Sequence record: PQ471516.1
Direction: 5' to 3' (one strand)
DNA length: 64,000 nucleotides
Shown: positions 17,561-37,849 of the stretch, one piece after another
Position numbering within the stretch: position 1 is the stretch's first letter
How the letters are laid out: every line of letters begins with the position of its first letter
The notes under the pieces: generated by a model
The model's database searches: none
Seen by the model: the letters and a program-made list of their open reading frames with translations, nothing else
What the model was told of the DNA's origin: nothing
Program-made: the position numbers and the translations under genes

Positions 17561-17590
17561 AAAGGGTTGACTACGGTCAACCCTTTTTTT
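17561..17590 (+). terminator. GGTTGAC-loop-GTCAACC hairpin cassette copy 1
   Basis: AAAGGGTTGAC-TACG-GTCAACCCTTTTTTT. Confidence 0.85.
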
Positions 17591-17621
17591 ATGGGACAAA
17601 TTCGTAAATGGTGATACAATG

Positions 17622-18090
17622 ATCTATGCACAACCACAATGACAGTACTTGTACTGATAATCTTCCCTAATTCACTTGAAAACGTAAAGGATAGATGAGC
17701 TTTTCATTGTAGCGAACAGCAAAAGAAACCCGTTAGATGTGGGCATAGTTTGAACCCCTCACGGCAATGCGGCTGTATAAAGAACCACGTTAGGATGGCT
17801 GGTGGTTCCTCGATAGACATATAAGGATAACACCTTACGAATTATCTAAGGGAGAGTTATCAGATTTTGTACAATATAGTTGCGTCCAAAATTTGAGTAC
17901 TCACATTAAGTATTTGATTGCATAGATACTTAATGAAGATACACTATGTTTAAAAGTGTAGACCGTCATATGAAACTGAAGTAGAGAGAACCAGGATGAC
18001 CCGCTTTCGTGCTCTTTAAGAGTAATCTTCAATGCAATAGCTCTGATACCATCAGCGTCAAATTCCCCTCGGTGTGGGGGGGGGAAGAAA
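17622..18090 (+). ncRNA. candidate large structured ncRNA
   Basis: No track ORF; extended -10 TGaTACAAT at 17612-17620; at least 6 helices incl. long-range 17654-17673/17839-17863. Confidence 0.55.
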
Positions 18091-18218
18091 AATCACCTCA
18101 ACAAATCCCGTCAATATTAAAAGTCCTTGACAGTTATTATACATTCGCGTAAGATACGTAGTATCAGAAGCGAACAGACATCTCGAAGAGATGGATGATT
18201 AACATTAAGGAACATCTA

Positions 18219-18428
18219 ATGAATTCAACAATCTTCTTAGTAGCAGCTCTTTCAATGCAAAGCGGTGTACAAATCACTCCAATGAATTCCATGAATCAAT
18301 GTATTTCTGTTCGTGATAGTACCTACGAACAGGTCAATAAAAATATCTGGATGTCTATTGACAAAGAACAGATGTGGTGTTATAACAGTAATACAAAAGT
18401 TAAACTGTTTGTTGGTGAGAAAGAATAA
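18219..18428 (+). CDS. small hypothetical protein
   Basis: AAGGA SD; promoter 18127-18155. Confidence 0.75.
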   Translation: MNSTIFLVAALSMQSGVQITPMNSMNQCISVRDSTYEQVNKNIWMSIDKEQMWCYNSNTKVKLFVGEKE

Positions 18429-18510
18429 TAGTTGACACGTAAGAAGTTCTAGAGTATAATTTCTACATTGAGTACTGAACTAAATCATTAATTAATCAAG
18501 AGGGTTTATC

Positions 18511-18687
18511 ATGCAAGTTATCGTTCTTATTGTTGGTATCGTACTGGGTGTTTATGGTCATTCCTGGATGCAGGAGAAGTTTCCTAATACTCGTCCAGAC
18601 TTCTGTAGCACTACTGTTAGTTCTGAACTATCTAAAGATAGCATTGGAACTAAACTGGATAAAGTACTGAACGTAATTAACGAGTGA
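18511..18687 (+). CDS. 58-aa membrane-anchored protein
   Basis: Hand translation MQVIVLIVGIVLGVYG...; GAGGG SD; promoter 18432-18460. Confidence 0.7.
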   Translation: MQVIVLIVGIVLGVYGHSWMQEKFPNTRPDFCSTTVSSELSKDSIGTKLDKVLNVINE

Positions 18688-18698
18688 GGTAAGTTATA

Positions 18699-18986
18699 AT
18701 GTTTATTCCTAATAATTCTAAAATTGGAACACAAGTACAACTTCTAGAAGATGTAAGTACTTGCAGTGGCACTTTCACTAAAGGTCACATCTTAACTATC
18801 ACAGGTGAAACCGAGCGTGGTTATGATTTGGAAGATGCTGATGGTAATCGTATCTTAGAAGCAGGGTTTAGTCGTTTTGTTGAAGTGGATAGTACTGACC
18901 AGAAAGAAACAGAAGGTCATTGTTTTGATTACCAAGAAGTTAACTCAAAATGTATCTGTGGTGAAATTTATAGTAAATGGGATTGA
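18699..18986 (+). CDS. hypothetical protein
   Basis: GAGG SD. Confidence 0.8.
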   Translation: MFIPNNSKIGTQVQLLEDVSTCSGTFTKGHILTITGETERGYDLEDADGNRILEAGFSRFVEVDSTDQKETEGHCFDYQEVNSKCICGEIYSKWD

Positions 18987-19103
18987 CATAGTATAGAAAT
19001 ACTATATAATGTTTATATCAAAGGGAATGCAGTGAAAGGAAAGACAGCATAATCGTACTCGTCACTGCGTTTCCACCCTTTTAAATTAAATGAGGAATTA
19101 ATT

Positions 19104-19412
19104 ATGTTTCAAACTAACACTCAAGGTTTTGTAATCATCGATCTGAATAAAAACAGCGGTCATTGGATGAAACCTACTGACGCATGTATGCAGTTTGATT
19201 TCTTAGGTTATAAAATCAGTGTAAGCACTGGTGGTTCAGTACTGCGTGGTGGTTGTATCGTTGAACATCTCGTCACTGATCCTGAAGGCCGCGAATACGA
19301 AATCGCAGGTTCAGTACAAGATGCTATCATGTTCGTGTGTCAGCGTGAAATGAATGGCAGTAACAGCAACGCACTGACAAACGCATTATCACAAGAAGTG
19401 GAGGTTCGTTAA
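19104..19412 (+). CDS. hypothetical protein
   Basis: GAGGA SD; promoter 18983-19010. Confidence 0.85.
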   Translation: MFQTNTQGFVIIDLNKNSGHWMKPTDACMQFDFLGYKISVSTGGSVLRGGCIVEHLVTDPEGREYEIAGSVQDAIMFVCQREMNGSNSNALTNALSQEVEVR

Positions 19413-19657
19413 TGAAATATATTGTTTTAGTAGTAATGGCGTTTTTACTGAGTGCTTGTGATGCAAGTACGAAAGACCGAACCAGTGAATTCCTTCTTCC
19501 TACTGAGTTAAAGGATGCTGGGTGTAAGATTTACCGTATGCGTCAGGAAGGTGATGGTGCAACTTTGTACACAGTTTACTGCCCTCATGCTAATACCAGT
19601 ACATCTTTCCGTACAGGAAAGACAACCGTACATGCATCTGTCATCAATGGTGAATAA
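19412..19657 (+). CDS. putative lipoprotein
   Basis: Signal peptide with lipobox LSAC. Confidence 0.8.
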   Translation: MKYIVLVVMAFLLSACDASTKDRTSEFLLPTELKDAGCKIYRMRQEGDGATLYTVYCPHANTSTSFRTGKTTVHASVINGE

Positions 19658-19658
19658 C

Positions 19659-20024
19659 ATGGGATTGGACACAACTAAAGCCCAAGAACTACATAGGCGA
19701 GCAATGAATGAAGAGTTTTTAGCAAACATTCGCTATAAGATGGAGAAGCTATATCGTAGTGCTGAAATCTTAGAAGACAAAAAACCTTCCATGACTACAA
19801 AATATTTCAATATCACTAACGACATTTGTTATAGTCCAGGTGAAATTTGGATTGAGTGGGAGTCTTGGACAGGGGATATTCTTCGTGTACAAGGTTACTG
19901 TGTTCAATACGCTTTCGACGGTAATTCTAAATCACTGAAGGTACTATGTACTAATACGAATGATGTAGTGGATGTCAACTTACATTGTATTAAATGGGTT
20001 GACTTTGGAGATGTAGATGAATAA
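19659..20024 (+). CDS. hypothetical protein
   Basis: Start moved to MGLDTT directly after the upstream stop. Confidence 0.7.
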   Translation: MGLDTTKAQELHRRAMNEEFLANIRYKMEKLYRSAEILEDKKPSMTTKYFNITNDICYSPGEIWIEWESWTGDILRVQGYCVQYAFDGNSKSLKVLCTNTNDVVDVNLHCIKWVDFGDVDE

Positions 20025-20277
20025 AATTAAATTCATTGTACTTATGGTTCTCATGTGTTTTTCACTCACTGGGTGTGATGAAGACCTTTCAGCTAAAACA
20101 TTAGCTCGCTGGAACTGTAAGATGACTGGTGAGAAGTTCAAAACAGTCGAAAGTGTTTGTGTTGGTGAAGGTAGAAGCCGTTGTGATAAAATGGTTGACC
20201 ACGAAGTGGAATTGTTTGTATATGATTGTCCAACAAAGGGTCGAGTACTGAGTAAAAGTGAGTTAATTTATAATTGA
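20017..20277 (+). CDS. putative lipoprotein
   Basis: Lipobox LTGC. Confidence 0.8.
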   Translation: MNKIKFIVLMVLMCFSLTGCDEDLSAKTLARWNCKMTGEKFKTVESVCVGEGRSRCDKMVDHEVELFVYDCPTKGRVLSKSELIYN

Positions 20278-20333
20278 CAGTACACCACAAAAGGGATACA
20301 ATGTATCCCTACTTTAATCGAAGAGGCAAATAA

Positions 20334-20543
20334 ATGACTACTAATGAAATGCTGAAAGCAATCTGGGATAAAGGTTATGAACTGAAAGTAACCAGTACTG
20401 AGATTCGTGTATTCAAGACTGAGTACTGTGAATATCTGGATTTAGATACTTATAACAGTATTGTCGTTGAGCAGCACAAAGGTAATGTTACTGAAAGTAT
20501 TGATTCAGTACTTAAACGTTCTTTAGCGATCATTGGTGCTTAA
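20334..20543 (+). CDS. hypothetical protein
   Basis: GAGG SD; promoter 20274-20302. Confidence 0.8.
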   Translation: MTTNEMLKAIWDKGYELKVTSTEIRVFKTEYCEYLDLDTYNSIVVEQHKGNVTESIDSVLKRSLAIIGA

Positions 20544-20544
20544 A

Positions 20545-20640
20545 ATGAATTCAGATTTACAGAAGATGATTGGATTTGGTATTTCTGTGTTTTTTGTTGT
20601 GATTTCTTTTGCAATTTTCATCCCTAAACTATTTCATTAA
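20545..20640 (+). CDS. 31-aa single-TM peptide
   Basis: Hand translation MNSDLQKMIGFGISVFFVVISFAIFIPKLFH. Confidence 0.55.
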   Translation: MNSDLQKMIGFGISVFFVVISFAIFIPKLFH

Positions 20641-20650
20641 GAGGTGTATT

Positions 20651-20845
20651 ATGATTTCTTTATATGTTGCTGTTATGCTCACTCATGGACAAATCGACCG
20701 CACCGTAGGTAAAGGTGTTTACACTACAGCAGATGAATGTTACACTGCTACTGCTTGGCCTCAAGATGAAGGTTCAAGTAATGAATTCAAATGTCTCAAA
20801 GTTAAAGGTGACTTTGTTAATCTAAAGGTTGTTGAGGTTAAATAA
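20651..20845 (+). CDS. small hypothetical protein
   Basis: GAGGTG SD. Confidence 0.75.
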   Translation: MISLYVAVMLTHGQIDRTVGKGVYTTADECYTATAWPQDEGSSNEFKCLKVKGDFVNLKVVEVK

Positions 20846-21329
20846 TGGACATAAACAGATTACTATCGATCATTTCCAGTAAATGTAGTAACTCCTTTAA
20901 TTATATGAACAAGGTTCAAGTAGTCTCCGAGGAATGTTATGGAGTAACAACTATACAGTTTTTGGATCTCGATAGTAATAGTTTATGTTATATATACTTG
21001 ACAACCCGTAGTGATGAACTTAAAAAACCGAAATTGTATTATTTGGCAAACAGTGTTCAGACACGCGTGATATTGAGATACTTTATTATCCTGGAAAATC
21101 TACACGCGAAATTGTTTATGACATGTACGCACTAGATGATAACTTTGTTATTGATTACAGTACTGAAGAAAAGGTTTTTCAACAAAGTTTAGTGCACAAC
21201 TTTGTGTTGGGTGATCCTGGCATTCCAAAGATTTTTAAAATTCTAGATTCAATTACAGTGGATTTTGAATTTCATATGTGCATACGTTCTGAATACTTGG
21301 ATGATTTTGTGGAGATTTTTGGTTTATGA
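20845..21329 (+). pseudogene. family F gene split by a frameshift at the A6 run 21022-21027
   Basis: The 21123 frame is open from 21024 (KTEIVLFGK...TEEKVFQQSLV); adding one A joins the two ORFs. Confidence 0.65.
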
Positions 21330-21547
21330 AACGATTTTACATCAACTACGTATGTGTATCCGAATTCTGTAACGTAAGAGGTCACACAATCGAAAAGCAA
21401 GCTATGGATGTGTATGTTCGTGCTGAAAGTCCTACACATGCATTGTTTAAACTTATCAGTGAAGTTACAAAGTACAATACACCCAAAACCCAACGCTACA
21501 TTGGTGCTTTGTATGATATCAATGAAGTTCCAGGGTGTGATATATAA
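21326..21547 (+). CDS. hypothetical protein
   Basis: ORF track. Confidence 0.7.
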   Translation: MKRFYINYVCVSEFCNVRGHTIEKQAMDVYVRAESPTHALFKLISEVTKYNTPKTQRYIGALYDINEVPGCDI

Positions 21548-21615
21548 AAAATACTTGACTTGGATTAGAAATCTATATATAATGTATACATATTAATCGC
21601 AATGGAAAACAAATC

Positions 21616-22290
21616 ATGTTGGCTAATCTTAAGTACTTTGTAACTTCTCCGTGGGATGAACGTGGTGTTGAACTGAACCACAAAGAAACAAGTTTTGATG
21701 ACATTGGTGTAGGTACATACATCTCTGCTAATTTTGATCGTAACCATCCATTTTGGGAAAAGTTTAAAGATAATGAAAGTAATCGTGTTATGTCATTATT
21801 TCAACTTAAACAACCAGGGATTGTAGCTGGTTATAATGAAGAAGACATGATCAATACATTCACTAACTATAAGGTAGTTGAAGAATTCCCGTGGATTAAT
21901 AAAAACAACGGCAATGCTTATAGTTCAGAGGATTATCGTGAAATGGTCACAAATGATGATGTAATTACGTTACCAAGTGGACGTCCAATGCCATCATCAA
22001 CAAATTGTATGTCTTCTTATGGTACGGCTGATAATCTTCAGCAAATCCTGAAGAAGTATAAGCGTGTTCTGGATTCAGAAGACGAGTTAGTACTGTGTAT
22101 TCATCCTGTGTACAAATCCGACCAACCAGAAAGTGGTGGCTGGCGTTGGCATAAGAATGGTACATATATTGGCAACAAACGAAGTAAACGTGGATATGAA
22201 TACCTGGCTGATGAACCTGATATTGATGTAGTAATCGGCTTTAAATTTATTAAAGTACAGAGGAAAGACAATGCTTTATCTAATTCTTAG
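21616..22290 (+). CDS. conserved phage protein (YGTADN...GGWRWHK.G.YIG...EYL.DEP motif)
   Basis: Motif recalled from phage hypothetical proteins; function unknown. Confidence 0.8.
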   Translation: MLANLKYFVTSPWDERGVELNHKETSFDDIGVGTYISANFDRNHPFWEKFKDNESNRVMSLFQLKQPGIVAGYNEEDMINTFTNYKVVEEFPWINKNNGNAYSSEDYREMVTNDDVITLPSGRPMPSSTNCMSSYGTADNLQQILKKYKRVLDSEDELVLCIHPVYKSDQPESGGWRWHKNGTYIGNKRSKRGYEYLADEPDIDVVIGFKFIKVQRKDNALSNS

Positions 22291-22513
22291 TTTTGTGGTT
22301 GCAATCGTTTTTATGTTTTACCCAACCTTCGTAGCACTGGTTGTACAGAAAAGCTACCGTACTATTGGCATCATCATGGTACTGAACATTACACTTGCTC
22401 TAGTGTCTATGCTTGTAGTAGTATCATCTCTGGCGTGGATTGATATCATTACACTTTGGTTATTTGTGTTTTCTTATTTGATGATTGTTGAAGACAAACC
22501 TATTGACTTATAA
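22271..22513 (+). CDS. small membrane protein (T4 Imm-like layout)
   Basis: YPTFVA...I.VLN pattern, 3 TM segments. Confidence 0.6.
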   Translation: MLYLILSFVVAIVFMFYPTFVALVVQKSYRTIGIIMVLNITLALVSMLVVVSSLAWIDIITLWLFVFSYLMIVEDKPIDL

Positions 22514-22561
22514 GTTACTTATGATATAATAACTTTACATTAACTGATATGAGGTATTAAA

Positions 22562-22894
22562 ATGTTAGCACTTATTTCTTCTATTCCGGCTATGGTACTC
22601 GTTTGGATTATTGTTTTTTATATGTTTTCATCTGCTAAAACAAAAGAAAAGATGGAAGACTTGTTCTTGTTGGATACAACTGTAGTTGAAGTATTCTTCT
22701 GGGTAGTAGTCATCGGAACTGTTGTAATGATTCTGAACTTTGTATTACCACTTGGAATCGTTCACAACATTCTGTCACTTGTTGAATATTTTATTGCAAT
22801 CATTTGGTTCATGCAATGTCTGTTTGCTGGTAAGGTTGGAATCTGGATTACTTTGGTGAAAGAAAAGATTAGTACGCTTACTAAAACTAAGTAA
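22562..22894 (+). CDS. membrane protein
   Basis: 3 TM segments, GAGG SD. Confidence 0.8.
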   Translation: MLALISSIPAMVLVWIIVFYMFSSAKTKEKMEDLFLLDTTVVEVFFWVVVIGTVVMILNFVLPLGIVHNILSLVEYFIAIIWFMQCLFAGKVGIWITLVKEKISTLTKTK

Positions 22895-22966
22895 TATTCT
22901 CAAAAATGTTAAATACTTCTGTACAAAGTAATGTTCAGAAGTATTTTTACTTTTATTGAGGGTATC

Positions 22967-23329: not shown

Positions 23330-23340
23330 ACGAGGTTCTT

Positions 23341-23709: not shown

Positions 23710-23713
23710 GGAT

Positions 23714-24073: not shown

Positions 24074-24087
24074 TCTGGAGATAAAAT

Positions 24088-24279
24088 ATGTTGATTTATC
24101 AAGGTGATGGTATTCGTGTATTGCAGCATCCATTCCTTCAAGTCTTTGATGTACAGAAGTTTCAAGAAGGTGATGATCCAAGAACATATGGACGTAAACA
24201 TGATTACTTCACTGTAAAGCAATGTACAAGTATTGAAGAAGTTCGTTCATTGGTGAAAGAACTAGAAAATAATGGTTGA
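24088..24279 (+). CDS. hypothetical protein
   Basis: GGAG SD. Confidence 0.75.
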   Translation: MLIYQGDGIRVLQHPFLQVFDVQKFQEGDDPRTYGRKHDYFTVKQCTSIEEVRSLVKELENNG

Positions 24280-24305
24280 CTTCGGTCAACCTTTTTTTGT
24301 ATACT
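24274..24305 (+). promoter_or_regulatory. terminator-promoter hairpin cassette copy 2
   Basis: GGTTGAC-TTCG-GTCAACC-T7; TTGACT-18-TATACT. Confidence 0.8.
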
Positions 24306-24332
24306 TAATTCATATTAATTGATGAGGGTATT

Positions 24333-26272: not shown

Positions 26273-26305
26273 GGGTTGACCGAAGTCAACCCTTTGTTGT
26301 ATAGT
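26273..26305 (+). promoter_or_regulatory. terminator-promoter hairpin cassette copy 3
   Basis: GGGTTGAC-CGAA-GTCAACCC; TTGACC-18-TATAGT. Confidence 0.7.
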
Positions 26306-26314
26306 GAGGTTCTT

Positions 26315-27826: not shown

Positions 27827-27832
27827 ACACTA

Positions 27833-27857
27833 AGGTTGACTTCGGTCAGCCTTTTTT
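27833..27857 (+). terminator. hairpin cassette copy 4
   Basis: AGGTTGAC-TTCG-GTCAGCC-T6. Confidence 0.85.
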
Positions 27858-27936
27858 ATTGATTTTGTATTGACAGTGTTAAAAATAAATTATACAATAC
27901 TCATCTTATTGTCAAACATATTATAGGAGCGTTAAA

Positions 27937-28023: not shown

Positions 28024-28110
28024 ATGGGATTATATCTTGCAATTTCAAGTATTGTCTTTGTTGTTATCGTTACTGGATGGTTTGGGTATCTAATGTTAAG
28101 TACAAAATAG
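28024..28110 (+). CDS. 28-aa hydrophobic peptide
   Basis: AAGGAG SD. Confidence 0.65.
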   Translation: MGLYLAISSIVFVVIVTGWFGYLMLSTK

Positions 28111-28147
28111 GTTGACTTCGGTCAGCCTTTTCTTTATACTATAAATA
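28110..28147 (+). promoter_or_regulatory. cassette copy 5 plus T4-like late promoter
   Basis: TTGACT-17-TATACT, then TATAAATA 28140-28147. Confidence 0.8.
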
Positions 28148-28193: not shown

Positions 28194-29714
28194 ATGCCAG
28201 GTCAATTTACTGATAAAAATGGTGGTAATATGGCTGGTCACTCTGATAAATGGAGTGATGCTAACCGCCGTAAGAATAGTTACCAAGCAGGTCAAGGTTC
28301 ACGTGGTTCACGTAACCAAGGAACAGGTCTAGCTGGTAAAGCAAACACTGAAGCAGGTGAAGTTAAGAGTACTGAGAACATGACTGAGCTAGAGAAGCTA
28401 CGCTATGTTAACTCTTTGGGTCTTCTAAACCCAACACAAAAGCAACGCCTTGCTGATATGGAACGTGCTGAGAAAGAACAAGAAGCACCACAACCAGAAC
28501 AACCTAAACCAGAAGCACCTAAAGCTGCTAACCCAGTTAAAGAGTTGTCTGACAATTTAGGTAAGATCTTTGCTAACAAACCTCAATTGATCCAAGGTAT
28601 TGTTAAAGCACTACAAGCTGTACCTAAAGAAGAACTCAAAGGTAAAGCACAAGCTGTACTGGATGCAATGAAAGGTAATAAGAGTACTGAACCAACTGAA
28701 GTATTCAGTACTATCATGCGTGCACTTGAAGGTCAAGAAGAAGCAACTGCTGAAGAAGCAAGTCTTGAAAGCATCCTCCATACTGTTGACAGTATAGGGA
28801 AAGAAGACCGTGCTAACGCCCAGCAAGTTAAGAATGTTCTTGCTAAGTTAGAAAACCGTCTTGAAGGTAAAGATGATAAGATTCAATTAGTATATGATGC
28901 TATTAAAGCAGCATTAGATTCTTATGCACCTGGTGAGAAGTCTCGATTCATTACTGCTATGAATGCTGCATTCAATACTATGAAAAAGTATGAAGATGAA
29001 CATGGCGAGAAAGTATCAAAAGATGGTTACTTAGTTCGTGATGATGAAGAAGGGGCAGTTGACCAGAAAGATGCTGAAACATCTCATGATGATTTACCTG
29101 ATACTGTTGATATGGATGGTTACATTCATCGTCCTGAAATGGGAGAGTTTGGTTCTGACAAAGAAGGATTTGAACATGCAATGGCAGTGTACAAAGCTCT
29201 CGTGAACAATCCAGATTATGCCAACCGATTTGTAGATGAGTTTGATAGTGCATGGAACAACTACAAAGACAAAGGTTATGACTTCCCTGCTGAGGCAGCA
29301 TTCTTTGAACTTGGTAAACTTTTAGCTAAACATGGAATTGATGTAGGTTCTAAAGATGGTACTGATACTGATGGCATGGAAGCAGAATTGGCTAAAGATC
29401 GTGAAATGAACGACAACTCCATTCATGAACTCCAAAAGCTAATGATGTGGATATCCGATATTGGTAAAAAAGCTGGTGCTGATAATAAGAGTATCAACAA
29501 AAACATTAGTTGGATTAAAAGTAATGTTGGTAAAAATGCTCGTAAACTACAAAAAGCATGGACTGATTTAGTAAATGGTGCTGATGATGTTGACATTGAA
29601 TCACCAGAAGCATACGAATATGCATTAACTACTCTTGATAATTCCTTTAAAGATTACGATAACGGTAACGTAACTCATTGGGAAAAGGATATCATGAACA
29701 AATACGGTAAATGA
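28194..29714 (+). CDS. large acidic late protein, candidate internal head/ejection protein
   Basis: Late promoter, GGAG SD before MPGQF; helical, Glu/Asp/Lys/Ala-rich, no Cys. Confidence 0.7.
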   Translation: MPGQFTDKNGGNMAGHSDKWSDANRRKNSYQAGQGSRGSRNQGTGLAGKANTEAGEVKSTENMTELEKLRYVNSLGLLNPTQKQRLADMERAEKEQEAPQPEQPKPEAPKAANPVKELSDNLGKIFANKPQLIQGIVKALQAVPKEELKGKAQAVLDAMKGNKSTEPTEVFSTIMRALEGQEEATAEEASLESILHTVDSIGKEDRANAQQVKNVLAKLENRLEGKDDKIQLVYDAIKAALDSYAPGEKSRFITAMNAAFNTMKKYEDEHGEKVSKDGYLVRDDEEGAVDQKDAETSHDDLPDTVDMDGYIHRPEMGEFGSDKEGFEHAMAVYKALVNNPDYANRFVDEFDSAWNNYKDKGYDFPAEAAFFELGKLLAKHGIDVGSKDGTDTDGMEAELAKDREMNDNSIHELQKLMMWISDIGKKAGADNKSINKNISWIKSNVGKNARKLQKAWTDLVNGADDVDIESPEAYEYALTTLDNSFKDYDNGNVTHWEKDIMNKYGK

Positions 29715-29720
29715 TAAAGA

Positions 29721-29756
29721 AAAGGGTTGACTTCGGTCAGCCCTTTTTGCTATAAT
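29721..29756 (+). promoter_or_regulatory. terminator-promoter cassette copy 6
   Basis: GGGTTGAC-TTCG-GTCAGCCC-T5; TTGACT-18-TATAAT. Confidence 0.85.
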
Positions 29757-29784
29757 CATTTCATCAACTCAAGAGGAAACAAAA

Positions 29785-30192
29785 ATGAAAAAGACTATTT
29801 TAAGCGTAATCGGTACAGTACTGTTCATGGTAACTTCAGTTGCTTCTGCTGCAACAGTAGAAGAGATCTTTAATAACAACCTACCTACTCAAGAAGAGAT
29901 GGGTATTAAGAAGTGTGACCTTTCCCGTTACATCATTATGGGGTCACAACTGGTTCCTGATGGTAAGGTTAAAAATCGTGTTAATCTGGTTGAAGATGGT
30001 AACACCTTCAGTTTTGAATATGGCGTAGCACCCACATCCGGTACTATGGATAACGTTGATGAAAACACTGGTTCCACCTGGAGTACTAACAAAGGTGATG
30101 TGTTCCATCGTATGCGTGAAGGTGGTAAACTGAAATATGTTTACGAAAGTGAATTCATCAAACGCGTTTATATTATGACCAACTGCCATTGA
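29785..30192 (+). CDS. exported protein
   Basis: Signal peptide ending ASA. Confidence 0.85.
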   Translation: MKKTILSVIGTVLFMVTSVASAATVEEIFNNNLPTQEEMGIKKCDLSRYIIMGSQLVPDGKVKNRVNLVEDGNTFSFEYGVAPTSGTMDNVDENTGSTWSTNKGDVFHRMREGGKLKYVYESEFIKRVYIMTNCH

Positions 30193-31205: not shown

Positions 31206-31208
31206 AAA

Positions 31209-31562: not shown

Positions 31563-31570
31563 GTGAATAT

Positions 31571-31921: not shown

Positions 31922-31932
31922 AGGAGCATACT

Positions 31933-32259
31933 ATGTTCGCACTACGTAATAAAAAGACTCACCAAATCGTTGATTATGAATGGGTTTACTATTCCAATAC
32001 TGGCGGCCCTGAGATGATTCTGTGCCATGACGGTGAAGAACCATTTGTAACAAAACGCCGTGAAGCACTAGAAGAGATCATCGAAGAATACAATACCAAT
32101 GTAAATGCTGAAAATGGTCCTTATGACGATGGCCTACGTGTAGAGTTACCTGATGCTTATGAACATGGTAACACGGATTCTTTACGTATAGAGTTGCCAG
32201 ATGCTTATGAATCTGGTAACATGGATTCTTATGAGATTGTAGAACTGGTGGTTAAGTAA
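31933..32259 (+). CDS. MFALR...YEIVEL family protein with a 16-aa internal duplication
   Basis: 48-nt tandem repeat 32134-32229. Confidence 0.8.
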   Translation: MFALRNKKTHQIVDYEWVYYSNTGGPEMILCHDGEEPFVTKRREALEEIIEEYNTNVNAENGPYDDGLRVELPDAYEHGNTDSLRIELPDAYESGNMDSYEIVELVVK

Positions 32260-32636: not shown

Positions 32637-32712
32637 GTTGACAATATAGTTCAGTACTGTATAATGTTTACCAAGGGGATGAGTTGTTCGTCCCTACAAT
32701 CGAGGAACTACT

Positions 32713-33270
32713 ATGATTACTTTTAATAAAACTGCGAACCACATCCATGAAATCTTTATCAACGGTCACAAAGCTGGCCTTATCCGTTTACTGGCACATC
32801 ATCCTGATGTCGTAGTAAGTGATAACGAACCAAAAGATTGGCGTGTATTTTTCTTTGGAAAGTACAGTGATTTTCAAGTTTCTTCTTTAAAGGGCATTCG
32901 TTCTGTTTGTTCCTTAAATGAAATTAAAGAAAAACTGGAAGGAGCATTGAAAACAAATGTCAATGACATTCTCCCAGCAGAAAACTTTGATGTAAAAGGT
33001 TATGCATTGGCTTATATGAAAGATGGTACTGTTCAGTCTATCAGTACTGAATATGGATGGCACTGGACTGAGTATTTTACTTACGGTTCTAGTAATGTTT
33101 TGATGGCCTCGCGTAGTAAATTAGAAGAAGTAATGTCCATTATTATTGCTCAGGAACGTGAATCTTCTGACAAACCAGAAATGTGGAGTTCAACTTACAT
33201 GGATCGCATTGACTATGTTATGATGACTCCAATCTTTAATACTGAATACTACAATACATTAACTAAGTGA
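32713..33270 (+). CDS. hypothetical protein
   Basis: GAGGA SD; upstream promoter. Confidence 0.85.
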   Translation: MITFNKTANHIHEIFINGHKAGLIRLLAHHPDVVVSDNEPKDWRVFFFGKYSDFQVSSLKGIRSVCSLNEIKEKLEGALKTNVNDILPAENFDVKGYALAYMKDGTVQSISTEYGWHWTEYFTYGSSNVLMASRSKLEEVMSIIIAQERESSDKPEMWSSTYMDRIDYVMMTPIFNTEYYNTLTK

Positions 33271-33277
33271 GACTCTA

Positions 33278-33454
33278 ATGAAACTACGTACACGCAATCG
33301 TCTGATGGATGCACTGTATCACGAACAGCTTTCACTGAATGAAGTAAAACGTCAGCTAATGGCTGCCTATCATTTACCTGCTCGTACTGCTAAACAGCGT
33401 TCTAAAGAACTCCTAGAAGAAGCTATTGAGTACTGGGAATCTGATTCGTACTAA
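33278..33454 (+). CDS. 58-aa protein, paralog of 35476
   Basis: Hand translation MKLRTRNRLMDALY...AIEYW. Confidence 0.75.
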   Translation: MKLRTRNRLMDALYHEQLSLNEVKRQLMAAYHLPARTAKQRSKELLEEAIEYWESDSY

Positions 33455-33482
33455 TTGTCACGTTAATTAAGTGAGGCGATAA

Positions 33483-33734
33483 ATGAAAATTTTATTAGTT
33501 CTAATACTACTAATTGTTTTACCATTTACGTTAGTATCTCCTGAACTTGCATGGAATGTGTTTGTGTACTTACTATGTACTATGGTGGTAAATGGTATCT
33601 TGTTCTTAGTTCTATTCATAAATGGAATAGGACACGGTGGAGGATGGACCAGTACTGCTGATATTGTACATAAAACCACTATGTCTTTATTTGTAGTGTG
33701 GAATTTATTCTGGACTTGGTTTGTGTTCTTCTAA
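33483..33734 (+). CDS. membrane protein
   Basis: 3 TM segments. Confidence 0.75.
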   Translation: MKILLVLILLIVLPFTLVSPELAWNVFVYLLCTMVVNGILFLVLFINGIGHGGGWTSTADIVHKTTMSLFVVWNLFWTWFVFF

Positions 33735-33742
33735 TTAAAAAT

Positions 33743-34114
33743 ATGAATATAGATTTGAAAGGTGCAACCCGAACTGTCATACTCATTGGGGAATATGCTA
33801 TCAAGATTCCAACCTTTAAAAGTTGGAAGCTATTCTTAACAGGGATGATAGCTAACCTCAATGAACGTTCGTGGATGCAGTACTCCAAGCGTAGTGATAC
33901 TGGTATCTGTCCTACGTTGTGGTCATCATGTACTGGACTAGTAACTGTACAGAAACGTTGTAAGCCAGTACAACATAGGGGTTTATTTTGGGTGGAGTTG
34001 TGTGCTTTAGCATTGAATTCAGAGTTAAGTACTGACTTCTTTTATTCAGATGCGAAGCCAGAAAACTTTGGTTATCTGAATGGTAAGTTAGTTAAACTTG
34101 ATTATGGAGATTAA
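33743..34114 (+). CDS. minimal protein-kinase-like fold protein
   Basis: GATR..AIKIP...DAKPENFG..NGKLVKLDYG. Confidence 0.7.
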   Translation: MNIDLKGATRTVILIGEYAIKIPTFKSWKLFLTGMIANLNERSWMQYSKRSDTGICPTLWSSCTGLVTVQKRCKPVQHRGLFWVELCALALNSELSTDFFYSDAKPENFGYLNGKLVKLDYGD

Positions 34115-34115
34115 T

Positions 34116-34385
34116 ATGTACGCACTGTATAATAAAGAAAAGAAACGATTTGCTAAGGTTGAAATTTCGATTGATACCTTTGATATGTTGGAGTACTGTA
34201 TTGTGACGGACCTATATGCTAACTTGTATTACGTTCTTGATGACGTATCAGTACTGCAACGATTGCTTGAGAATTCCAAAAGTCAATGCCAGGGCATCCA
34301 TGATGGTTCATCTTATGAAACACCTGAGTGTTCCTACGGCTATCTGGACGGGTATGAGATTGTGAAGTTGGGGATTGTTGAATAA
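34116..34385 (+). CDS. MYALY...YEIVKL family protein
   Basis: GGAG SD; paralog of 31933. Confidence 0.8.
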   Translation: MYALYNKEKKRFAKVEISIDTFDMLEYCIVTDLYANLYYVLDDVSVLQRLLENSKSQCQGIHDGSSYETPECSYGYLDGYEIVKLGIVE

Positions 34386-34390
34386 AGAAA

Positions 34391-34424
34391 AGGGTTGACT
34401 ACGGTCAGCCCTTTTTGCTATAAT
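34391..34424 (+). promoter_or_regulatory. terminator-promoter cassette copy 7
   Basis: About 51 nt identical to copy 6 except one base. Confidence 0.85.
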
Positions 34425-34452
34425 CATTTCATCGAAACGAGAGGATGAATAC

Positions 34453-34887
34453 ATGACACGCATTAACTTAGTACACGTTAAAGAACTTGCTGACCAACAT
34501 CTGATGGCTGAATATCGTGAACTCCCACGTGTATTTGGTGCTGTACAAAAACACGTTCAAGCACGTAAGCGTGTACGTGATTTCAAAATTAACAGTACTT
34601 ATCTGTTAGGAACAGGTCACGTCACATTTTTCTACGACAAACTACTGTACTTACAGAAGCGACATGTAGATATCGTGAATGAATGTCTCCGTCGTGGTAT
34701 GAAGATTCAAAATACTGACGTAAACGACATTAGCGACTTCCCTGCTGAGTTTTGTAATGACTATGTACCAACGCAGTCCGAGATTAAAACATCGCGTGAG
34801 CGTTTGATTGAGAAGCTCCAGATGAAGCCAATGTGGTACAAATTCACTGATGTTGAATTGCCAGTTTATTATGTTGAGATGATTTGA
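34453..34887 (+). CDS. denV: pyrimidine-dimer DNA glycosylase / endonuclease V
   Basis: MTRINL...[17 protein letters not shown]...[13 protein letters not shown]4 DenV signature. Confidence 0.95.
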
Positions 34888-34911
34888 TAATTCATTCTAG
34901 AAGGAAATTAT

Positions 34912-35152
34912 ATGTTCGCACTACGCCACAAAGAACTTCATGTGTATTGATACACAATGGGATTGCTTTGGTAGTACTGAAGTATTGGAAGAACACGCTG
35001 AGAACGTCTTTGTTGTTAGTGAACGTTCATTGTTGGAAGCACTAATTGAGGACTTCAATGCTGGTACTAATGCATTCTCTCTGAACTTTCCGATTGTTGC
35101 AGATCCAGAAGCATTTGTTATGTACGAAATTGTAGAACTTACTGTGAAATAG
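34912..35152 (+). pseudogene. MFALR...YEIVEL family gene with a frameshift near 34933-34940
   Basis: SD-led MFALRHKEL frame stops at 34950; the rest (MCIDTQW...YEIVELTVK) is in another frame. Confidence 0.6.
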
Positions 35153-35169
35153 TATCATTGGAGATAACC

Positions 35170-35466
35170 ATGAAAGCACTGACCGCCGTAGAAATCAAAG
35201 AGCAATACAAAGATTTATTCGAGTTTAAACACAACGGTGAAGAATTCAAACGTAGTAGTACTGTACGTGACTTCTTGAACAAACTCTTCTGTACTAAGTT
35301 CAAAGCTGCGTACATTACTATGCCTGAGCGTACTTCAAGTGCAGAAGATATCAAGAAGTTCGGTTTAGGTTGGGATGCACAATCAATCATCCTGGTGAAT
35401 GCAGATGAAGAGCTAGTGTACTTGACTAACTCCGAGTGGGCTTCTTTCATGTATCTTCGTAAATAA
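35170..35466 (+). CDS. hypothetical protein
   Basis: GGAG SD; start moved. Confidence 0.8.
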   Translation: MKALTAVEIKEQYKDLFEFKHNGEEFKRSSTVRDFLNKLFCTKFKAAYITMPERTSSAEDIKKFGLGWDAQSIILVNADEELVYLTNSEWASFMYLRK

Positions 35467-35475
35467 GGAACTATA

Positions 35476-35658
35476 ATGAAACTGAAACGTTATGATCGCA
35501 ATCGTATTATGGATGCTTTGTATCGTGAGGAAATTTCACTCAATAAGGTGAAAGTGTACTTTATGTTAGAAGGTCGTATTCCAGTACGTAAAGCTAAACA
35601 GTTAGCTATTGAACTGCTGAATGAAGGTATTGAGTACTGGCATTATGACGGATATTGA
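35476..35658 (+). CDS. 60-aa protein, paralog of 33278
   Basis: RNRIMDALY...GIEYW. Confidence 0.8.
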   Translation: MKLKRYDRNRIMDALYREEISLNKVKVYFMLEGRIPVRKAKQLAIELLNEGIEYWHYDGY

Positions 35659-35668
35659 TTTGTAAAAT

Positions 35669-35743
35669 AAAAGGTTGACTTCGGGCAACCTTTTTCGTAT
35701 TATGTACTCATCGAAACGAAACATACTAAGGATTAAGAAAATG
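35669..35743 (+). repeat. cassette copy 8 with leader, direct repeat of 37775-37849
   Basis: About 75 nt with 3 mismatches, running to the start ATG. Confidence 0.9.
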
Positions 35744-37324
35744 CGTAAACAGACAAAATCAGACATAGAACAATTTTCTCGTAATTATTTAAAAAAACGC
35801 TTTGGTGTTGATTGTTTAATTGAAGTACTTATGAATGAACAAACCCCAAGTAAAAGTAAAATAGTATACCAACATCCCGAACGTTTCCTACCAGTGACAT
35901 GTTGGTATGTTCAAATAAAGCAACACTCAAAATTGAGTGCACCGCAATTAACACGCGAAGAAGTTATCGCCCAAACCGAATCATTATTTGACGATAGTGA
36001 AGGATTTAATATAATTTCGTATGATTTTACTGAGGAGTTGAGTCATACAATAATTACATACTCCCACCCAGAACGAATTAATCCACAGCATGTTGAATAT
36101 TACGTTCTGAAGCGTTTGGAAAGTGCGTCTTCACTCAATCCAAAATACAAGGATGGTGAAATTGAAGAGTTGAGTAAGCAGTATCTTTCCAATTTGGGAC
36201 ATGAATTTGTAAAAATTATAATTGATAATGGGACCGATTCTCTTATAGAATTTAAGGTTGAAAATCGCACACTCCCAGTAAGTATTATCTTTGGTGACCT
36301 TCGGCTACGTTCAAATGAAAGTCGTCCGGTACGCCAAGGATTTATAAGTGAAAATGAATGTGTACATAATGCAAAAAAAGTATTATCAGAACACAAAAAC
36401 ACTTTCATTAAGATTGATTATAATAAATCTGAAGTTAACCGTAGTATGATTCATTATAAATCTTCTAACAATATAATAAATGAAATAAGTTATCACACAT
36501 TAATGAATGAACCGTCATTTATTGAAAAAATAACTCTTGTTTCAATTAAAGAAACACTTGATGATGTATTCCATAATCTAGGAAACGGTTTCAAACTTGT
36601 ATCAGTAGGAGATTTACAGGGCGGCCAAACTGAAATTACATTCAGACACCCACAGCGTATATTACCATGCACTACAACTTTTTATAATTTGAAACATACA
36701 AATCCAAAAACTGGATTTAATCCAAAATTGACATTTGATGAAGTTACTGCAATGGGGGAAGACCACGCTCGTAAACACGGAACTAAGTTTTTGGGGATTG
36801 TTGGGAAGTTTAATGGTTATTCAACACGGCTTTCCTTCAAGTACCATGATAAAATAATTGAACAAACCTACCCAGCTATTTTAGCGGGCTACACTGGGTT
36901 TGGTGGTAGTGGTTATAAGCAACATGCTGATATTGCTCGTGTGTATGTGAATATGAATCATACCAAAGATGGTCTGAATGCCGGAAAAACGACACAAGAG
37001 TTCCATAAACGTTTATCCAAACGTAATAGTTCTTTCAAAAAAATATACAAAATTGAAAAATTCTGGGAAAATATTATGTTGATTGAATTCAAAACAACAG
37101 GTGGTGTGTATGGGGGTGAAATCGCCAGCGTATTGGAAACGTTAATCCATACCGAAGCAAAATGTGGCAACCGTAAAGATAGTGTGTATATGTATGATAA
37201 TGGAGATGGATATCGTGAAACATTCGAGGTCAACTATCTAGACCGTGTAGTTGATGTGATCAACGAATATAAAAAATCATATACACATAGCGTTAAAACC
37301 GACATTCTCGGTCTTCTTGAGTAA
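35741..37324 (+). CDS. putative homing endonuclease: N-terminal repeats + C-terminal GIY-YIG-like domain
   Basis: HPER/HPQR..P repeats; RVYV...LNAGKTT...KRLS...LETLIH. Confidence 0.6.
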   Translation: MRKQTKSDIEQFSRNYLKKRFGVDCLIEVLMNEQTPSKSKIVYQHPERFLPVTCWYVQIKQHSKLSAPQLTREEVIAQTESLFDDSEGFNIISYDFTEELSHTIITYSHPERINPQHVEYYVLKRLESASSLNPKYKDGEIEELSKQYLSNLGHEFVKIIIDNGTDSLIEFKVENRTLPVSIIFGDLRLRSNESRPVRQGFISENECVHNAKKVLSEHKNTFIKIDYNKSEVNRSMIHYKSSNNIINEISYHTLMNEPSFIEKITLVSIKETLDDVFHNLGNGFKLVSVGDLQGGQTEITFRHPQRILPCTTTFYNLKHTNPKTGFNPKLTFDEVTAMGEDHARKHGTKFLGIVGKFNGYSTRLSFKYHDKIIEQTYPAILAGYTGFGGSGYKQHADIARVYVNMNHTKDGLNAGKTTQEFHKRLSKRNSSFKKIYKIEKFWENIMLIEFKTTGGVYGGEIASVLETLIHTEAKCGNRKDSVYMYDNGDGYRETFEVNYLDRVVDVINEYKKSYTHSVKTDILGLLE

Positions 37325-37331
37325 AAAAAAT

Positions 37332-37366
37332 AAAAGGTTGACTTCGGTCAGCCTTTTTGCTATTAT
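37332..37366 (+). promoter_or_regulatory. terminator-promoter cassette copy 9
   Basis: TTGACT-17-TATTAT within the hairpin. Confidence 0.8.
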
Positions 37367-37502
37367 ATTAGTACTACCAACGTGAAAGAGTTCGATAAAC
37401 ATCTGAAGAAGAATGGCTTCGATACGAACAACTTTGCTATCAGTAGTATTACTGAAATCATGATTCAATACAACATTATTGTATATACATTACGAGGGTA
37501 AA

Positions 37503-37769
37503 ATGAAACCAATCACAACAACACAGAGTACTAACCTAACGGTTTTACATGATGGTTTAAAAGGTACAGTACGTGATCTTCTGAACTTCATTGATGGTAT
37601 TCAAGGTGATACCGGATACTGCATTTATACTACTATCATTCCTGGTGGTACGGAACTGTACTTCACCAATATGGAAGTATCGGAATCGGGTGAAACTGAT
37701 GATTCATTCCAAGAAGCCATCCAACAATTTCAGGAATCCTTAGAGGATTTAGGTTTTACGGTACAATGA
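37503..37769 (+). CDS. hypothetical protein
   Basis: GAGGG SD; start moved. Confidence 0.75.
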   Translation: MKPITTTQSTNLTVLHDGLKGTVRDLLNFIDGIQGDTGYCIYTTIIPGGTELYFTNMEVSESGETDDSFQEAIQQFQESLEDLGFTVQ

Positions 37770-37774
37770 CGAAA

Positions 37775-37849
37775 AAAAGGTTGACTTCGGTCAGCCTTTT
37801 TCGTATTATGTACTCATCGAAACGAAACACACTAAGGATTAAGAAAATG
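37775..37849 (+). repeat. cassette copy 10 with leader
   Basis: Direct repeat of 35669-35743. Confidence 0.9.

What the first reader, a model, noticed from the sequence alone, without database searches (positions are those of the whole stretch)
17561..37849. Ten copies of a fused terminator/promoter hairpin that modularises the accessory region
Seen: GGTTGAC-(TTCG/TACG/CGAA)-GTCA(A/G)CC-T tract at 17561, 24274, 26273, 27833, 28110, 29721, 34391, 35671, 37334 and 37777. In eight copies the left arm holds the -35 (TTGACY) with a -10 17-18 nt later, so one ~30-bp element ends one unit and starts the next. Pairs 29721/34391 (~51 nt) and 35669/37775 (~75 nt) are nearly identical. Known: PeSL promoter-stem-loop cassettes in T4-type phages shuffle modules and release minicircles. 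Inference: an analogous plug-and-play system.
Basis: partly seen in the sequence, partly recalled or inferred. Interest (0 to 1): 0.65.

Follow-up and report, generated by a model that had tools for sequence, protein, structure and literature searches.

The report
Fused terminator-promoter cassettes, jumbo coliphage
Ten copies of a short signal that both ends one transcript and starts the next punctuate the early-gene region of a 351-kb E. coli jumbo phage, and gene gains, losses and swaps between related phages start and stop at these signals, which makes them a new example of the 'PeSL' cassettes already described in T4-type phages.

Summary
GGTTGAC-N4-GTCARCC followed by a T tract occurs exactly ten times in the window, against 0 expected. 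All ten lie on the + strand between 17565 and 37796. The window is Escherichia phage Turkey5, a 121Q/RaK2-like Asteriusvirus. The whole genome has 11 copies, 10 of them in this 20-kb early region.

Each hairpin starts 7-14 nt after a stop codon (one overlaps the stop). In eight copies the left arm and loop give TTGACY, and a -10 hexamer follows 17-18 nt later. The T tract is therefore the promoter spacer.

The cassette is conserved in 14 relatives: 123 copies, of which 74 of the 92 distinct sequences have the -10. Structural breakpoints against those relatives fall in 8 of 9 cassette junctions, 6 of 11 plain-promoter junctions and 12 of 49 other junctions. Three indels equal exactly one cassette-to-cassette period, with the crossover inside the cassette.

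The same 18-mer occurs in KVP40, nt-1 and other phages, where PeSLs were defined, and the fused geometry is published. I therefore rate it a new member of a known kind. Minicircles, promoter activity and terminator activity remain untested. Homing endonucleases and plain promoters also contribute to the variation.

The parts
17561..17590 (+). Cassette 1, terminator only. The extended 11-bp stem (AAAGGGTTGAC/GTCAACCCTTT) has a TACG loop and T7 tract, and starts 8 nt after the stop of the phage sigma-factor gene (16594-17556). There is no fused -10 (TATGGG). It is followed by an unannotated conserved non-coding element.
24274..24305 (+). Cassette 2. A perfectly palindromic hairpin overlaps the upstream stop codon. 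TTGACT-18-TATACT. The ATG is 62 nt from the hairpin start.
26273..26305 (+). Cassette 3. The loop is inverted (CGAA) and the arms are palindromic. TTGACC-18-TATAGT. The ATG is 41 nt from the hairpin start. Right-hand breakpoint (26305-26314) against 7 relatives.
27832..27898 (+). Cassette 4. The hairpin plus T tract acts as terminator only, with a separate plain promoter TTGACA-17-TACAAT at 27870-27898. The 260-bp spacer to cassette 5 is a variable slot: empty in UE-S1, a 114-bp ORF in 121Q, a 294-bp ORF in JNE01 and about 700 bp in the BF17 group.
28109..28140 (+). Cassette 5. TTGACT-17-TATACT. It heads a single-gene module, a virion structural protein (phrog_20398) at 28194-29714.
29714..29788 (+). 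Cassette 6. The full 75-nt unit runs from the stop codon through A tract, hairpin, CTTTTTGC spacer, TATAAT, 5' UTR and SD to the ATG. It pairs with cassette 7 and flanks a 4.67-kb, 13-gene module. Breakpoints occur at 29707 and at 29748-29777.
34382..34456 (+). Cassette 7. TACG loop, TTGACT-18-TATAAT, heading the denV (pyrimidine-dimer glycosylase) gene. Insertions of 86 to 1545 bp in 7 relatives lie exactly at its 5' edge (34374-34389).
35666..35743 (+). Cassette 8. The weakened stem has an A.G mismatch and a core dG of -4.3. TTGACT-17-TATTAT. It forms a 78-nt, 95% repeat with cassette 10 and heads a 527-aa putative endonuclease (35741-37324). The left edge of the EJP2 cargo swap is at 35720.
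37327..37366 (+). Cassette 9. TTGACT-17-TATTAT. The right edge of the EJP2 cargo swap is at 37327. It heads two small ORFs.
37772..37849 (+). Cassette 10. TTGACT-17-TATTAT, heading the phrog_1250 gene that the record annotates as FleQ. It is the right edge of the replacement seen in all relatives (37762-37835). EJP2 has an extra 294-bp module here, flanked by two copies of this cassette.

Best explanation
The ten copies are PeSL-type composite regulatory cassettes of the early region of an Asteriusvirus jumbo phage.

As RNA, each element is predicted to be an intrinsic terminator for the upstream unit. It has a 7-bp G+C-rich stem, extended to as much as 12 bp by flanking A and U residues, a UNCG-type tetraloop in nine of ten copies, and a U tract.

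As DNA, the 5' arm plus first loop base form the -35 hexamer TTGACY. The T tract is the 17-18-bp spacer and a -10 hexamer follows. Host sigma-70 RNA polymerase should therefore start the next unit about 10 nt past the termination point, upstream of a short UTR, a Shine-Dalgarno site and the ATG.

These 50-78-nt cassettes are the only sequences repeated between otherwise unrelated small early genes. They, and to a lesser degree the plain promoters, therefore serve as patches of homology where recombination inserts, deletes or replaces self-contained transcription units.

Shown here: the anatomy, strand asymmetry, clustering, conservation, breakpoint coincidence and chimeric cassettes. Inferred: actual termination and initiation, early timing, and the recombination pathway. 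Untested: minicircles.
For: Statistics and position: 10 copies against 0 expected, and 10 of the genome's 11 copies lie in 20 kb. The stop codon lies 7-14 nt upstream of the hairpin and the ATG 41-84 nt downstream.

RNA-level selection: seven copies carry GTCAGCC, which keeps a U.G pair on the + strand but gives a C.A mismatch on the - strand. Core dG is -9.4 vs -4.2 kcal/mol. That fits an RNA hairpin read in the + direction and does not fit a DNA palindrome.

Promoter: eight copies have TTGACY-17/18 with a good -10. All 18 sites matching at least 11 of 12 consensus positions between 1 and 36 kb lie on the gene strand.

Conservation: 15 genomes hold 123 cassettes. Of the 92 distinct sequences, 74 have a -10 at 16-18 nt. 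Information content peaks over the A tract, hairpin, T tract, -10 and SD. The G17 and UE-S1 records already annotate these hairpins as predicted terminators.

Module exchange: breakpoints fall in 8/9 cassette junctions vs 12/49 promoter-less junctions, p = 0.0005. Of 208 pairwise events with at least 90% identical flanks, 129 have a cassette at one or both edges. Period-exact indels with chimeric cassettes are UE-S1 vs phAPEC6 (1085 bp), UE-S1 vs slurp01 (183 bp) and Turkey5 vs EJP2 (294 bp, 48-nt identical crossover zone). The Turkey5 35720-37327 cargo is swapped for 1339 bp in EJP2 between 97% and 99% identical flanks. Identity to JNE01 steps 98 to 92, then 93 to 91, then no match, then 97%, at cassettes 27834, 34393 and 37779.

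Kinship with known PeSLs: the same 18-mer occurs 7 times in KVP40 with the same -10 spacing, and also in nt-1, Aeromonas phage 65 and CR3-like phages. The published nt-1/KVP40 PeSL consensus (A3-4 G3 loop C3 T3-4; TTGYVH-N17-TAWWAT) fits (PMC4122927).

Geometry: the layout in which the stem encodes the -35, the T tract is the spacer and the -10 follows directly was shown functional in bacteria (bioRxiv 10.64898/2026.08.19.745784).
Against: There are no transcript 5' or 3' end data. The only RNA run offered laid 0 reads on the stretch.

Two of the ten copies lack a fused -10, and one has a weakened stem.

Breakpoints are not exclusive to the cassettes: 6 of 11 plain-promoter junctions, 12 of 49 other junctions and 18 intragenic clusters are also hit. 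Cassette vs plain promoter is not significant (p = 0.12).

Many events are insertions just 5' of a hairpin rather than cassette-to-cassette exchanges. The most variable slot holds putative homing endonucleases, which can move on their own.

Pairwise events are not phylogenetically independent.

The shared 18-mer could be convergent, because TTGAC in the 5' arm forces GTCAR in the 3' arm.
Confidence: 0.75

Rival explanations
1. The cassettes are ordinary, independently optimised terminator/promoter signals. They look alike only because a -35 placed inside a short strong stem has few sequence solutions. Breakpoints coincide with them only because they mark transcription-unit borders, where insertions are tolerated by selection. 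On this view the cassettes do not promote recombination.
For: Plain promoters without the hairpin also coincide with breakpoints (6/11), and the difference from cassettes is not significant. The JNE01 324-bp insert is flanked by a 27-bp repeat of a plain promoter. The same 18-mer appears in unrelated phage families with different loops, as expected for convergence. Promoter-coupled terminators are common in bacteria, where no role in recombination has been described.
Against: Three indels are exactly one cassette period long. Alignment overlaps of 35-56 nt place the crossover inside the cassette. Repeats of 75-78 nt extend through the UTR to the ATG of unrelated genes, beyond what the -35, stem and -10 require. 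GG/CC clamps and the U.G wobble are shared across families although other strong stems would serve equally well.
Confidence: 0.15
2. The variability is driven mainly by freestanding homing endonuclease genes that invade intergenic sites. The cassettes are then bystanders, or the signals these genes bring along or target.
For: The slot upstream of cassette 10 holds different putative endonucleases in different phages: 121Q gp221 (phrog_681, E 1e-77), G17_00092 and the JNE01 474-aa ORF (HNH/homing endonuclease phrog_559 and phrog_9084), and the Turkey5 527-aa ORF (phrog_681, E 6e-5). SD-15_S21 and UE-S1 lack the endonuclease cargo; their slot holds only about 0.7-0.8 kb. The roughly 1-kb insert near 18.4 kb in most relatives contains an HNH endonuclease, 121Q gp170.
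Against: The period-exact modules of 1085, 183 and 294 bp contain only small ORFs and no endonuclease. The JNE01 1545-bp insert holds four small ORFs. Cassette junctions without any endonuclease nearby are also breakpoints.
Confidence: 0.07
3. The palindrome is a DNA operator for a dimeric phage regulator, or a recognition element for the phage's own sigma factor. Alternatively it is a site for a site-specific recombinase or a MITE-like mobile element.
For: Three copies are perfect palindromes. A sigma-70-family gene lies directly upstream of the first copy. The bacterial study notes that terminator palindromes can double as transcription-factor binding sites.
Against: Seven of ten copies break the DNA palindrome in the one way that preserves RNA pairing on the + strand. 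There are no terminal inverted repeats or target duplications, and spacing is irregular at 276-6709 bp. Crossover points vary within and beside the cassette, which fits homology-driven exchange and does not fit a fixed cut site. The window was not scanned for integrase or transposase genes.
Confidence: 0.03

Closest known systems
PeSLs (promoter-early stem-loops) of Vibrio phages nt-1 and KVP40 (Comeau, Arbiol and Krisch 2014, PMC4122927)
   Same: Both have the same core hairpin GGTTGAC-N4-GTCAGCC flanked by an A tract and a T tract. KVP40 has 7 copies, e.g. at 21145 with TATTAT 18 nt after the -35. Both have a sigma-70-like promoter overlapping the stem, sit after stop codons and before SD and ATG, and are associated with indels between close relatives.
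   Different: In KVP40 the copies are scattered over about 130 kb and carry varied loops. In Turkey5 they are packed ten to 20 kb, mostly with a UUCG loop. The host phage here is an Asteriusvirus (RaK2/121Q-like, 351 kb), not a member of Straboviridae. The papers I could search do not describe PeSLs for this group.
PeSLs of coliphages RB49 and phi1 (Arbiol et al. 2010, PMC2839356)
   Same: Both are composite promoter/terminator cassettes concentrated in hyperplastic regions rich in small ORFans. Indels and replacements are bounded by them, and crossovers map within the cassette. A subclass with the stem-loop overlapping the -35 is listed.
   Different: The RB49/phi1 stems are mostly polyG/polyC and sit at variable positions. 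For those phages, promoter and terminator activity and minicircles were demonstrated by reporter assays and inverse PCR. None of that is shown here.
Promoter-coupled terminators of bacteria (Fletcher et al. 2026, bioRxiv 10.64898/2026.08.19.745784)
   Same: The geometry is identical: the stem-loop DNA provides the -35, the T tract is the spacer, the -10 follows directly, and the termination site lies about 10 bp upstream of the start site. Dual function was shown by mutagenesis.
   Different: Those are chromosomal, individually different sequences, not a repeated near-identical cassette. Their proposed role is tuning termination efficiency, not recombination.
Freestanding homing endonuclease genes in intergenic sites of T4-type phages
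   Same: Variable slots between conserved genes are occupied by different putative HNH-type or other endonucleases.
   Different: This explains only some slots here. The cassette-period indels carry no endonuclease.

Membership tests
PeSL (promoter-early stem-loop cassette) | A sigma-70-like early promoter and a stable stem-loop within one short intergenic cassette | tested here: met
   Eight of ten copies have TTGACY-17/18 and a -10 overlapping the hairpin. Across 15 genomes, 74 of 92 distinct cassettes do.
PeSL (promoter-early stem-loop cassette) | An upstream stop codon in an AT-rich tract, with a Shine-Dalgarno site and start codon at the 3' end | tested here: met
   The stop codon lies 7-14 nt before the hairpin in eight copies (it overlaps in one; cassette 5 follows a gene-free spacer), and the ATG lies 41-84 nt after the hairpin start in eight. 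The consensus shows an A tract and GAGGA.
PeSL (promoter-early stem-loop cassette) | Concentration in a hyperplastic region of small, variable genes | tested here: met
   Ten of 11 genomic copies lie in 20 kb. Apart from the nearest relative JNE01 (80%), relatives align over only 19-41% of this region at about 85% identity. Every relative examined shows the same clustering.
PeSL (promoter-early stem-loop cassette) | Insertions, deletions and replacements between close relatives are bounded by the cassettes, with crossovers inside them | tested here: met
   Cassette junctions are hit 8/9 vs 12/49 for promoter-less junctions, p = 0.0005. Three indels are period-exact and one cargo swap is cassette-bounded.
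PeSL (promoter-early stem-loop cassette) | Demonstrated promoter and terminator activity | not testable with these tools
   The RNA run X21 laid no reads. Only predictions exist: + strand dG of -9 to -18 kcal/mol, and ARNold annotations in the G17 and UE-S1 records.
PeSL (promoter-early stem-loop cassette) | Formation of minicircles by recombination between neighbouring cassettes | tested here: inconclusive
   Only Logan contigs of metagenomes were available. They break at the cassettes, as any repeat of 31 nt or more would cause, and the apparent joints have sides of only 21-31 nt.
PeSL (promoter-early stem-loop cassette) | Host genome is a T4-like myovirus, the group in which PeSLs were described | tested here: not met
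   The record's relatives are classified in Asteriusvirus, outside Straboviridae. This is where the family was described, not a mechanistic requirement.
Promoter-coupled terminator | The terminator stem DNA acts as the -35, the T tract as the spacer, and the -10 lies directly downstream | tested here: met
   Sequence geometry in eight copies, compared.
Intrinsic (Rho-independent) terminator | A G+C-rich stem-loop followed by a U tract, downstream of a gene on the same strand | tested here: met
   The terminator scan lists 7 of the ten outright. All ten have a 7-bp stem (one of them with a mismatch) and 3-7 T directly after the stem, preceded by a C in four copies.

The most novel reading that the evidence does not exclude
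The roughly 50-nt cassette may itself be exchanged horizontally between unrelated phage families. It comprises the hairpin, T-tract spacer, -10 and a shared initial transcribed motif CATC(A/G)AAC, and it is found in RaK2-like jumbo phages, Schizotequatrovirus vibriophages, Aeromonas T4-likes and CR3-like phages. On this reading it acts as a universal linker that lets early-gene modules cross family boundaries. It could also be actively used by a phage nuclease or recombinase, for example the endonucleases that sit in the cassette-bounded slots, instead of relying on passive homology alone.
Probability: 0.15. Interest if true: 0.7.

Novelty: new member of a known kind. Interest (0 to 1): 0.4.

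Why it matters
PeSLs were proposed as the linker sequences that make modular evolution of large virulent phages efficient, but they were documented only in T4-like phages. This window shows the same cassette, down to the same 18-nt hairpin, organising the early region of 350-kb RaK2/121Q-like jumbo phages. Natural recombinants have junctions inside it.

That extends the mechanism to a second large phage lineage. It also gives an annotation rule for the early transcription units of these poorly annotated genomes, in which over 80% of genes are hypothetical. Finally, it identifies defined, insulated slots with a terminator on one side and a promoter on the other, where cargo genes are naturally tolerated. 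Those slots are useful for engineering these phages and for finding their host-takeover and anti-defence genes.

The cross-family identity of the cassette raises a testable question: is it convergent, or horizontally shared?

Tried and rejected
I worked through the GenBank record and W handles instead.

2. Reads: the one RNA raw-read run (X21) laid 0 reads. The other three runs (X1 and X2 metagenomes, X6 labelled only as 'organism A') are Logan contigs that fragment at the cassettes. The 'joints' 34386>37771, 35720>37771 and 37358>37773 have sides of only 21-31 nt and 'between: not known'. I treat them as repeat and assembly effects, not as evidence of circles or deletions.

3. Rfam: no family covers the cassettes. 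Only weak sub-threshold sRNA hits appear on the first hairpin.

4. Pfam on genes next to the cassettes: mostly no hit. The record's 'DUF4379' label for the 527-aa ORF was not reproduced at E < 0.01. PHROGs gives only a weak endonuclease match. tblastn shows its N-terminal 350 aa are unique among 50,697 phage records.

5. CRISPR-like array, MITE and integron attC readings were rejected. Spacing is irregular, there are no terminal inverted repeats or duplications, the copies sit after stop codons, and strand-asymmetric wobble pairs point to an RNA hairpin.

6. The overall count of promoter-like sites is not above shuffles (77 vs 80.6). Only the high-scoring, strand-biased subset is informative.

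7. The large protein searches, structure prediction and complex prediction were not used, because no claim here rests on them.

Full report
**Identity of the window.**
Megablast places the window at 100% identity on Escherichia phage Turkey5 (PQ471516.1, 351,311 bp). Window coordinate equals record coordinate minus 287,311. The nearest relatives are Asteriusvirus jumbo phages: JNE01 at 96% over 80% of the region, and 121Q, PBECO4, G17, slurp01, phAPEC6, BF17 and others at about 85% over only 19-41%. The stretch 17.5-38 kb consists of about 50 small + strand genes, almost all hypothetical. It begins right after a phage sigma-70-family gene (16594-17556; Pfam Sigma70_r2 and r3). In the related phage CBB the equivalent region, with clustered RpoD-like promoters next to the sigma gene, was proposed to be the early host-takeover region (PMC5259590).

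- The pattern GGTTGAC-N4-GTCARCC occurs ten times on the + strand at the stated places, against 0 expected in shuffles. Relaxing to three mismatches adds nothing.
- The whole genome has 11 copies, ten of them within 20.2 kb.
- The two long pairs are real: 78 nt at 95% (35666/37772) and 75 nt at 87% (29714/34382).

**Anatomy.**
- The hairpin starts 7-14 nt after the upstream stop codon in eight copies, and overlaps it in one; cassette 5 follows a gene-free spacer. It is preceded by an A tract and followed by 3-7 T, preceded by a C in four copies.
- Seven copies have a TTCG loop closed by C-G, and two have TACG.
- + strand RNA folding energies are -9 to -18 kcal/mol.
- Seven copies carry GTCAGCC in the 3' arm. 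This keeps a U.G pair in + strand RNA but makes a C.A mismatch on the other strand (core -9.4 vs -4.2 kcal/mol). It also removes TTGAC from the bottom strand. This asymmetry argues for a directional RNA hairpin and against a DNA operator.
- In eight copies TTGACY (5' arm plus first loop base) is followed at 17-18 nt by TATAAT, TATTAT, TATACT or TATAGT. The terminator's T tract is thus the promoter spacer. A transcript started there does not contain the hairpin.
- Copy 17565 looks like a terminator only. Copy 27834 is a terminator with a separate plain promoter 20 nt further on.
- The region also holds many consensus promoters without hairpins, such as 18432, 18983, 30189 and 32638. All high-scoring ones lie on the gene strand.

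**Conservation.**
- All 14 relatives examined have 6-10 copies in the orthologous region, and usually one or two elsewhere.
- There are 123 cassettes in total, 92 of them distinct, and 74 of those have a -10 at 16-18 nt.
- The anchored profile shows conserved blocks for the A tract, hairpin, T tract, -10, a short UTR motif and GAGGA.
- The GenBank records of G17 and UE-S1 already mark these hairpins as predicted terminators. None marks the overlapping promoter.

**Do module boundaries coincide with the cassettes?**
I chained blastn alignments of Turkey5 against the 14 relatives and kept gaps whose sizes differ by at least 60 bp. The results were:

| Junction type | Junctions with a breakpoint |
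|---|---|
| Cassette-bearing | 8 of 9 |
| Plain promoter | 6 of 11 |
| Other | 12 of 49 |

- Cassette vs promoter-less junctions: p = 0.0005. Cassette vs all others: p = 0.0012. Cassette vs plain promoter: p = 0.12.
- Counting only breakpoints within the cassette itself, 8 of 10 cassettes are hit. The exceptions are 17565 and 24274.
- In an all-against-all comparison restricted to flanks at least 90% identical, 129 of 208 events have a cassette at an edge and 47 have one at both. These events are not independent.

**The clearest individual cases.**
- UE-S1 has one cassette where phAPEC6 has two, 1085 bp apart (three small ORFs). Its left flank matches the first phAPEC6 cassette and its right flank the second.
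- The same pattern holds for a 183-bp unit in UE-S1 vs slurp01.
- EJP2 has a 294-bp one-ORF unit flanked by two copies of the cassette that Turkey5 has once at 37779. The two share 48 identical nucleotides at the crossover.
- Between Turkey5 and EJP2 the cargo between 35720 and 37327 is replaced (1606 vs 1339 bp), while the flanks are 97% and 99% identical.
- Identity of Turkey5 to JNE01 changes stepwise at cassettes 27834, 34393 and 37779.

**A second pattern.**
Some events are insertions between the upstream stop codon and the hairpin. The JNE01 1545-bp insert at 34386 is an example: it starts with its own plain promoter and uses the resident hairpin at its end.

**What else contributes.**
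- The slot upstream of cassette 10 holds different putative endonucleases in 121Q, G17, JNE01 and Turkey5. SD-15_S21 and UE-S1 lack that cargo; their slot holds only about 0.7-0.8 kb.
- The roughly 1-kb insert near 18.4 kb in most relatives carries an HNH endonuclease.
- Homing endonucleases therefore explain part of the plasticity, as the PeSL authors also noted for T4-like phages.
- Plain promoters behave as weaker breakpoints. The exchange unit therefore appears to be the transcription unit, and the recombining sequence appears to be any short conserved regulatory patch.

**Comparison with what is known.**
- PeSLs were defined in RB49/phi1 as cassettes made of an AT-rich tract, a sigma-70-like promoter, a terminator stem-loop, an SD and an ATG. 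They are concentrated in hyperplastic regions and bound indels. Stems overlapping the -35 are one of five listed subclasses. Promoter activity, terminator activity and minicircles were shown experimentally (PMC2839356).
- The nt-1/KVP40 PeSL consensus (A3-4 G3 loop C3 T3-4; TTGYVH-N17-TAWWAT; PMC4122927) fits the Turkey5 element.
- KVP40 contains the very same 18-mer seven times, for example at 21145 followed by TATTAT.
- A 60-nt cassette query finds 175 phage records: Vibrio 51, Escherichia 35, Aeromonas 18, Klebsiella 12, Pectobacterium 10, Cronobacter 10 and others. An exact 23-mer occurs in IMG/VR contigs of 119-247 kb as well as in RaK2-like ones.
- The fused geometry has also just been described as widespread in bacteria and shown to be dual-function.
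- I found no paper describing PeSLs or fused promoter-terminators in RaK2/121Q-like phages.

**Verdict.**
The element is a member of the PeSL kind in a phage lineage where it had not been reported, so it is not a new kind. Transcription activity and minicircles remain untested, because the read data available were uninformative.

**Side findings.**
The most notable is an unannotated non-coding element of about 430 nt directly downstream of cassette 1. It is highly conserved, has four paralogous copies per genome, shows strong covariation and has no Rfam match. It deserves its own follow-up. Other side findings are listed separately.

Noticed in passing
window 17625-18125 (+); paralogues at Turkey5 record 54084-54510, 108830-109193 and 192128-192560 (loci L065-L067): An unannotated non-coding element of about 430 nt follows cassette 1 and has its own TG-extended -10 (TGATACAAT, 17612-17620). 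It is 94-96% identical across Asteriusvirus, while the surrounding region as a whole is about 76% identical. It is about 70% identical in CBB, GAP32, Serratia BF, Erwinia and Yersinia jumbo phages. There are four copies per genome, about 70% alike. RNAalifold on paralogues plus orthologues gives 84 pairs, 29 with compensatory double changes. No Rfam family matches at gathering score or at E <= 5. It is likely an undescribed structured RNA family of RaK2-like phages.
   Followed up: partly
window 42696-56091, - strand: A second stereotyped cassette occurs on the - strand. The hairpin CCAGTAC-N3-4-GTACTGG is followed by a T-rich tract. In nine copies (43994-56091) a conserved TAAATATAGTATAAT-like box, AAAGGAGG and an ATG then follow, about every 1.2 kb; a tenth hairpin at 42716 lacks these. 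Each heads one member of a tandem array of about 12 paralogous RCC1-repeat genes (about 390 aa, starting MLPF...). There is no TTGAC in the stem, so it may be a terminator fused to a non-early promoter class.
   Followed up: partly
window 219-4442: Seven tRNA genes and a group I intron (1685-1998, 95 bits) lie upstream of the early region.
   Followed up: no
window 35741-37324 (+): A 527-aa ORF lies between cassettes 8 and 9, annotated 'DUF4379' in the record. It has no Pfam hit at E < 0.01. Only its C-terminal third resembles the 121Q gp221-type endonuclease (30-38% identity). The N-terminal 350 aa have no match in 50,697 phage records.
   Followed up: partly
window 28194-29714 (+): A virion structural protein gene (phrog_20398, E 8e-211) sits as a single-gene unit between cassettes 5 and 6, inside the early-type region. 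It differs between relatives by in-frame indels, at least one near short 15-nt tandem repeats (28492-28523, 28737-28769).
   Followed up: no
window 18983-19031; JNE01 locus L002 9042-9366: JNE01 carries an extra 324-bp one-ORF unit flanked by a 27-bp direct repeat of a plain consensus promoter (TTGACA-16-TATAAT) with no hairpin. This shows that hairpin-less promoters can serve as exchange points too.
   Followed up: partly
cassettes in the window, and in L023, L028 and L033 (KVP40): Downstream of the -10, several cassettes from unrelated phage families share an initial transcribed motif close to CATC(A/G)AAC. This goes beyond what the promoter and terminator functions require and is unexplained.
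   Followed up: no
window 32135-32230 and 33370-33444 / 35574-35648: A 48-bp tandem duplication occurs at 32135-32230. A 75-nt, 71% identical repeat links the 3' ends of two small ORFs (33278-33454 and 35476-35658), suggesting paralogous small early genes.
   Followed up: no
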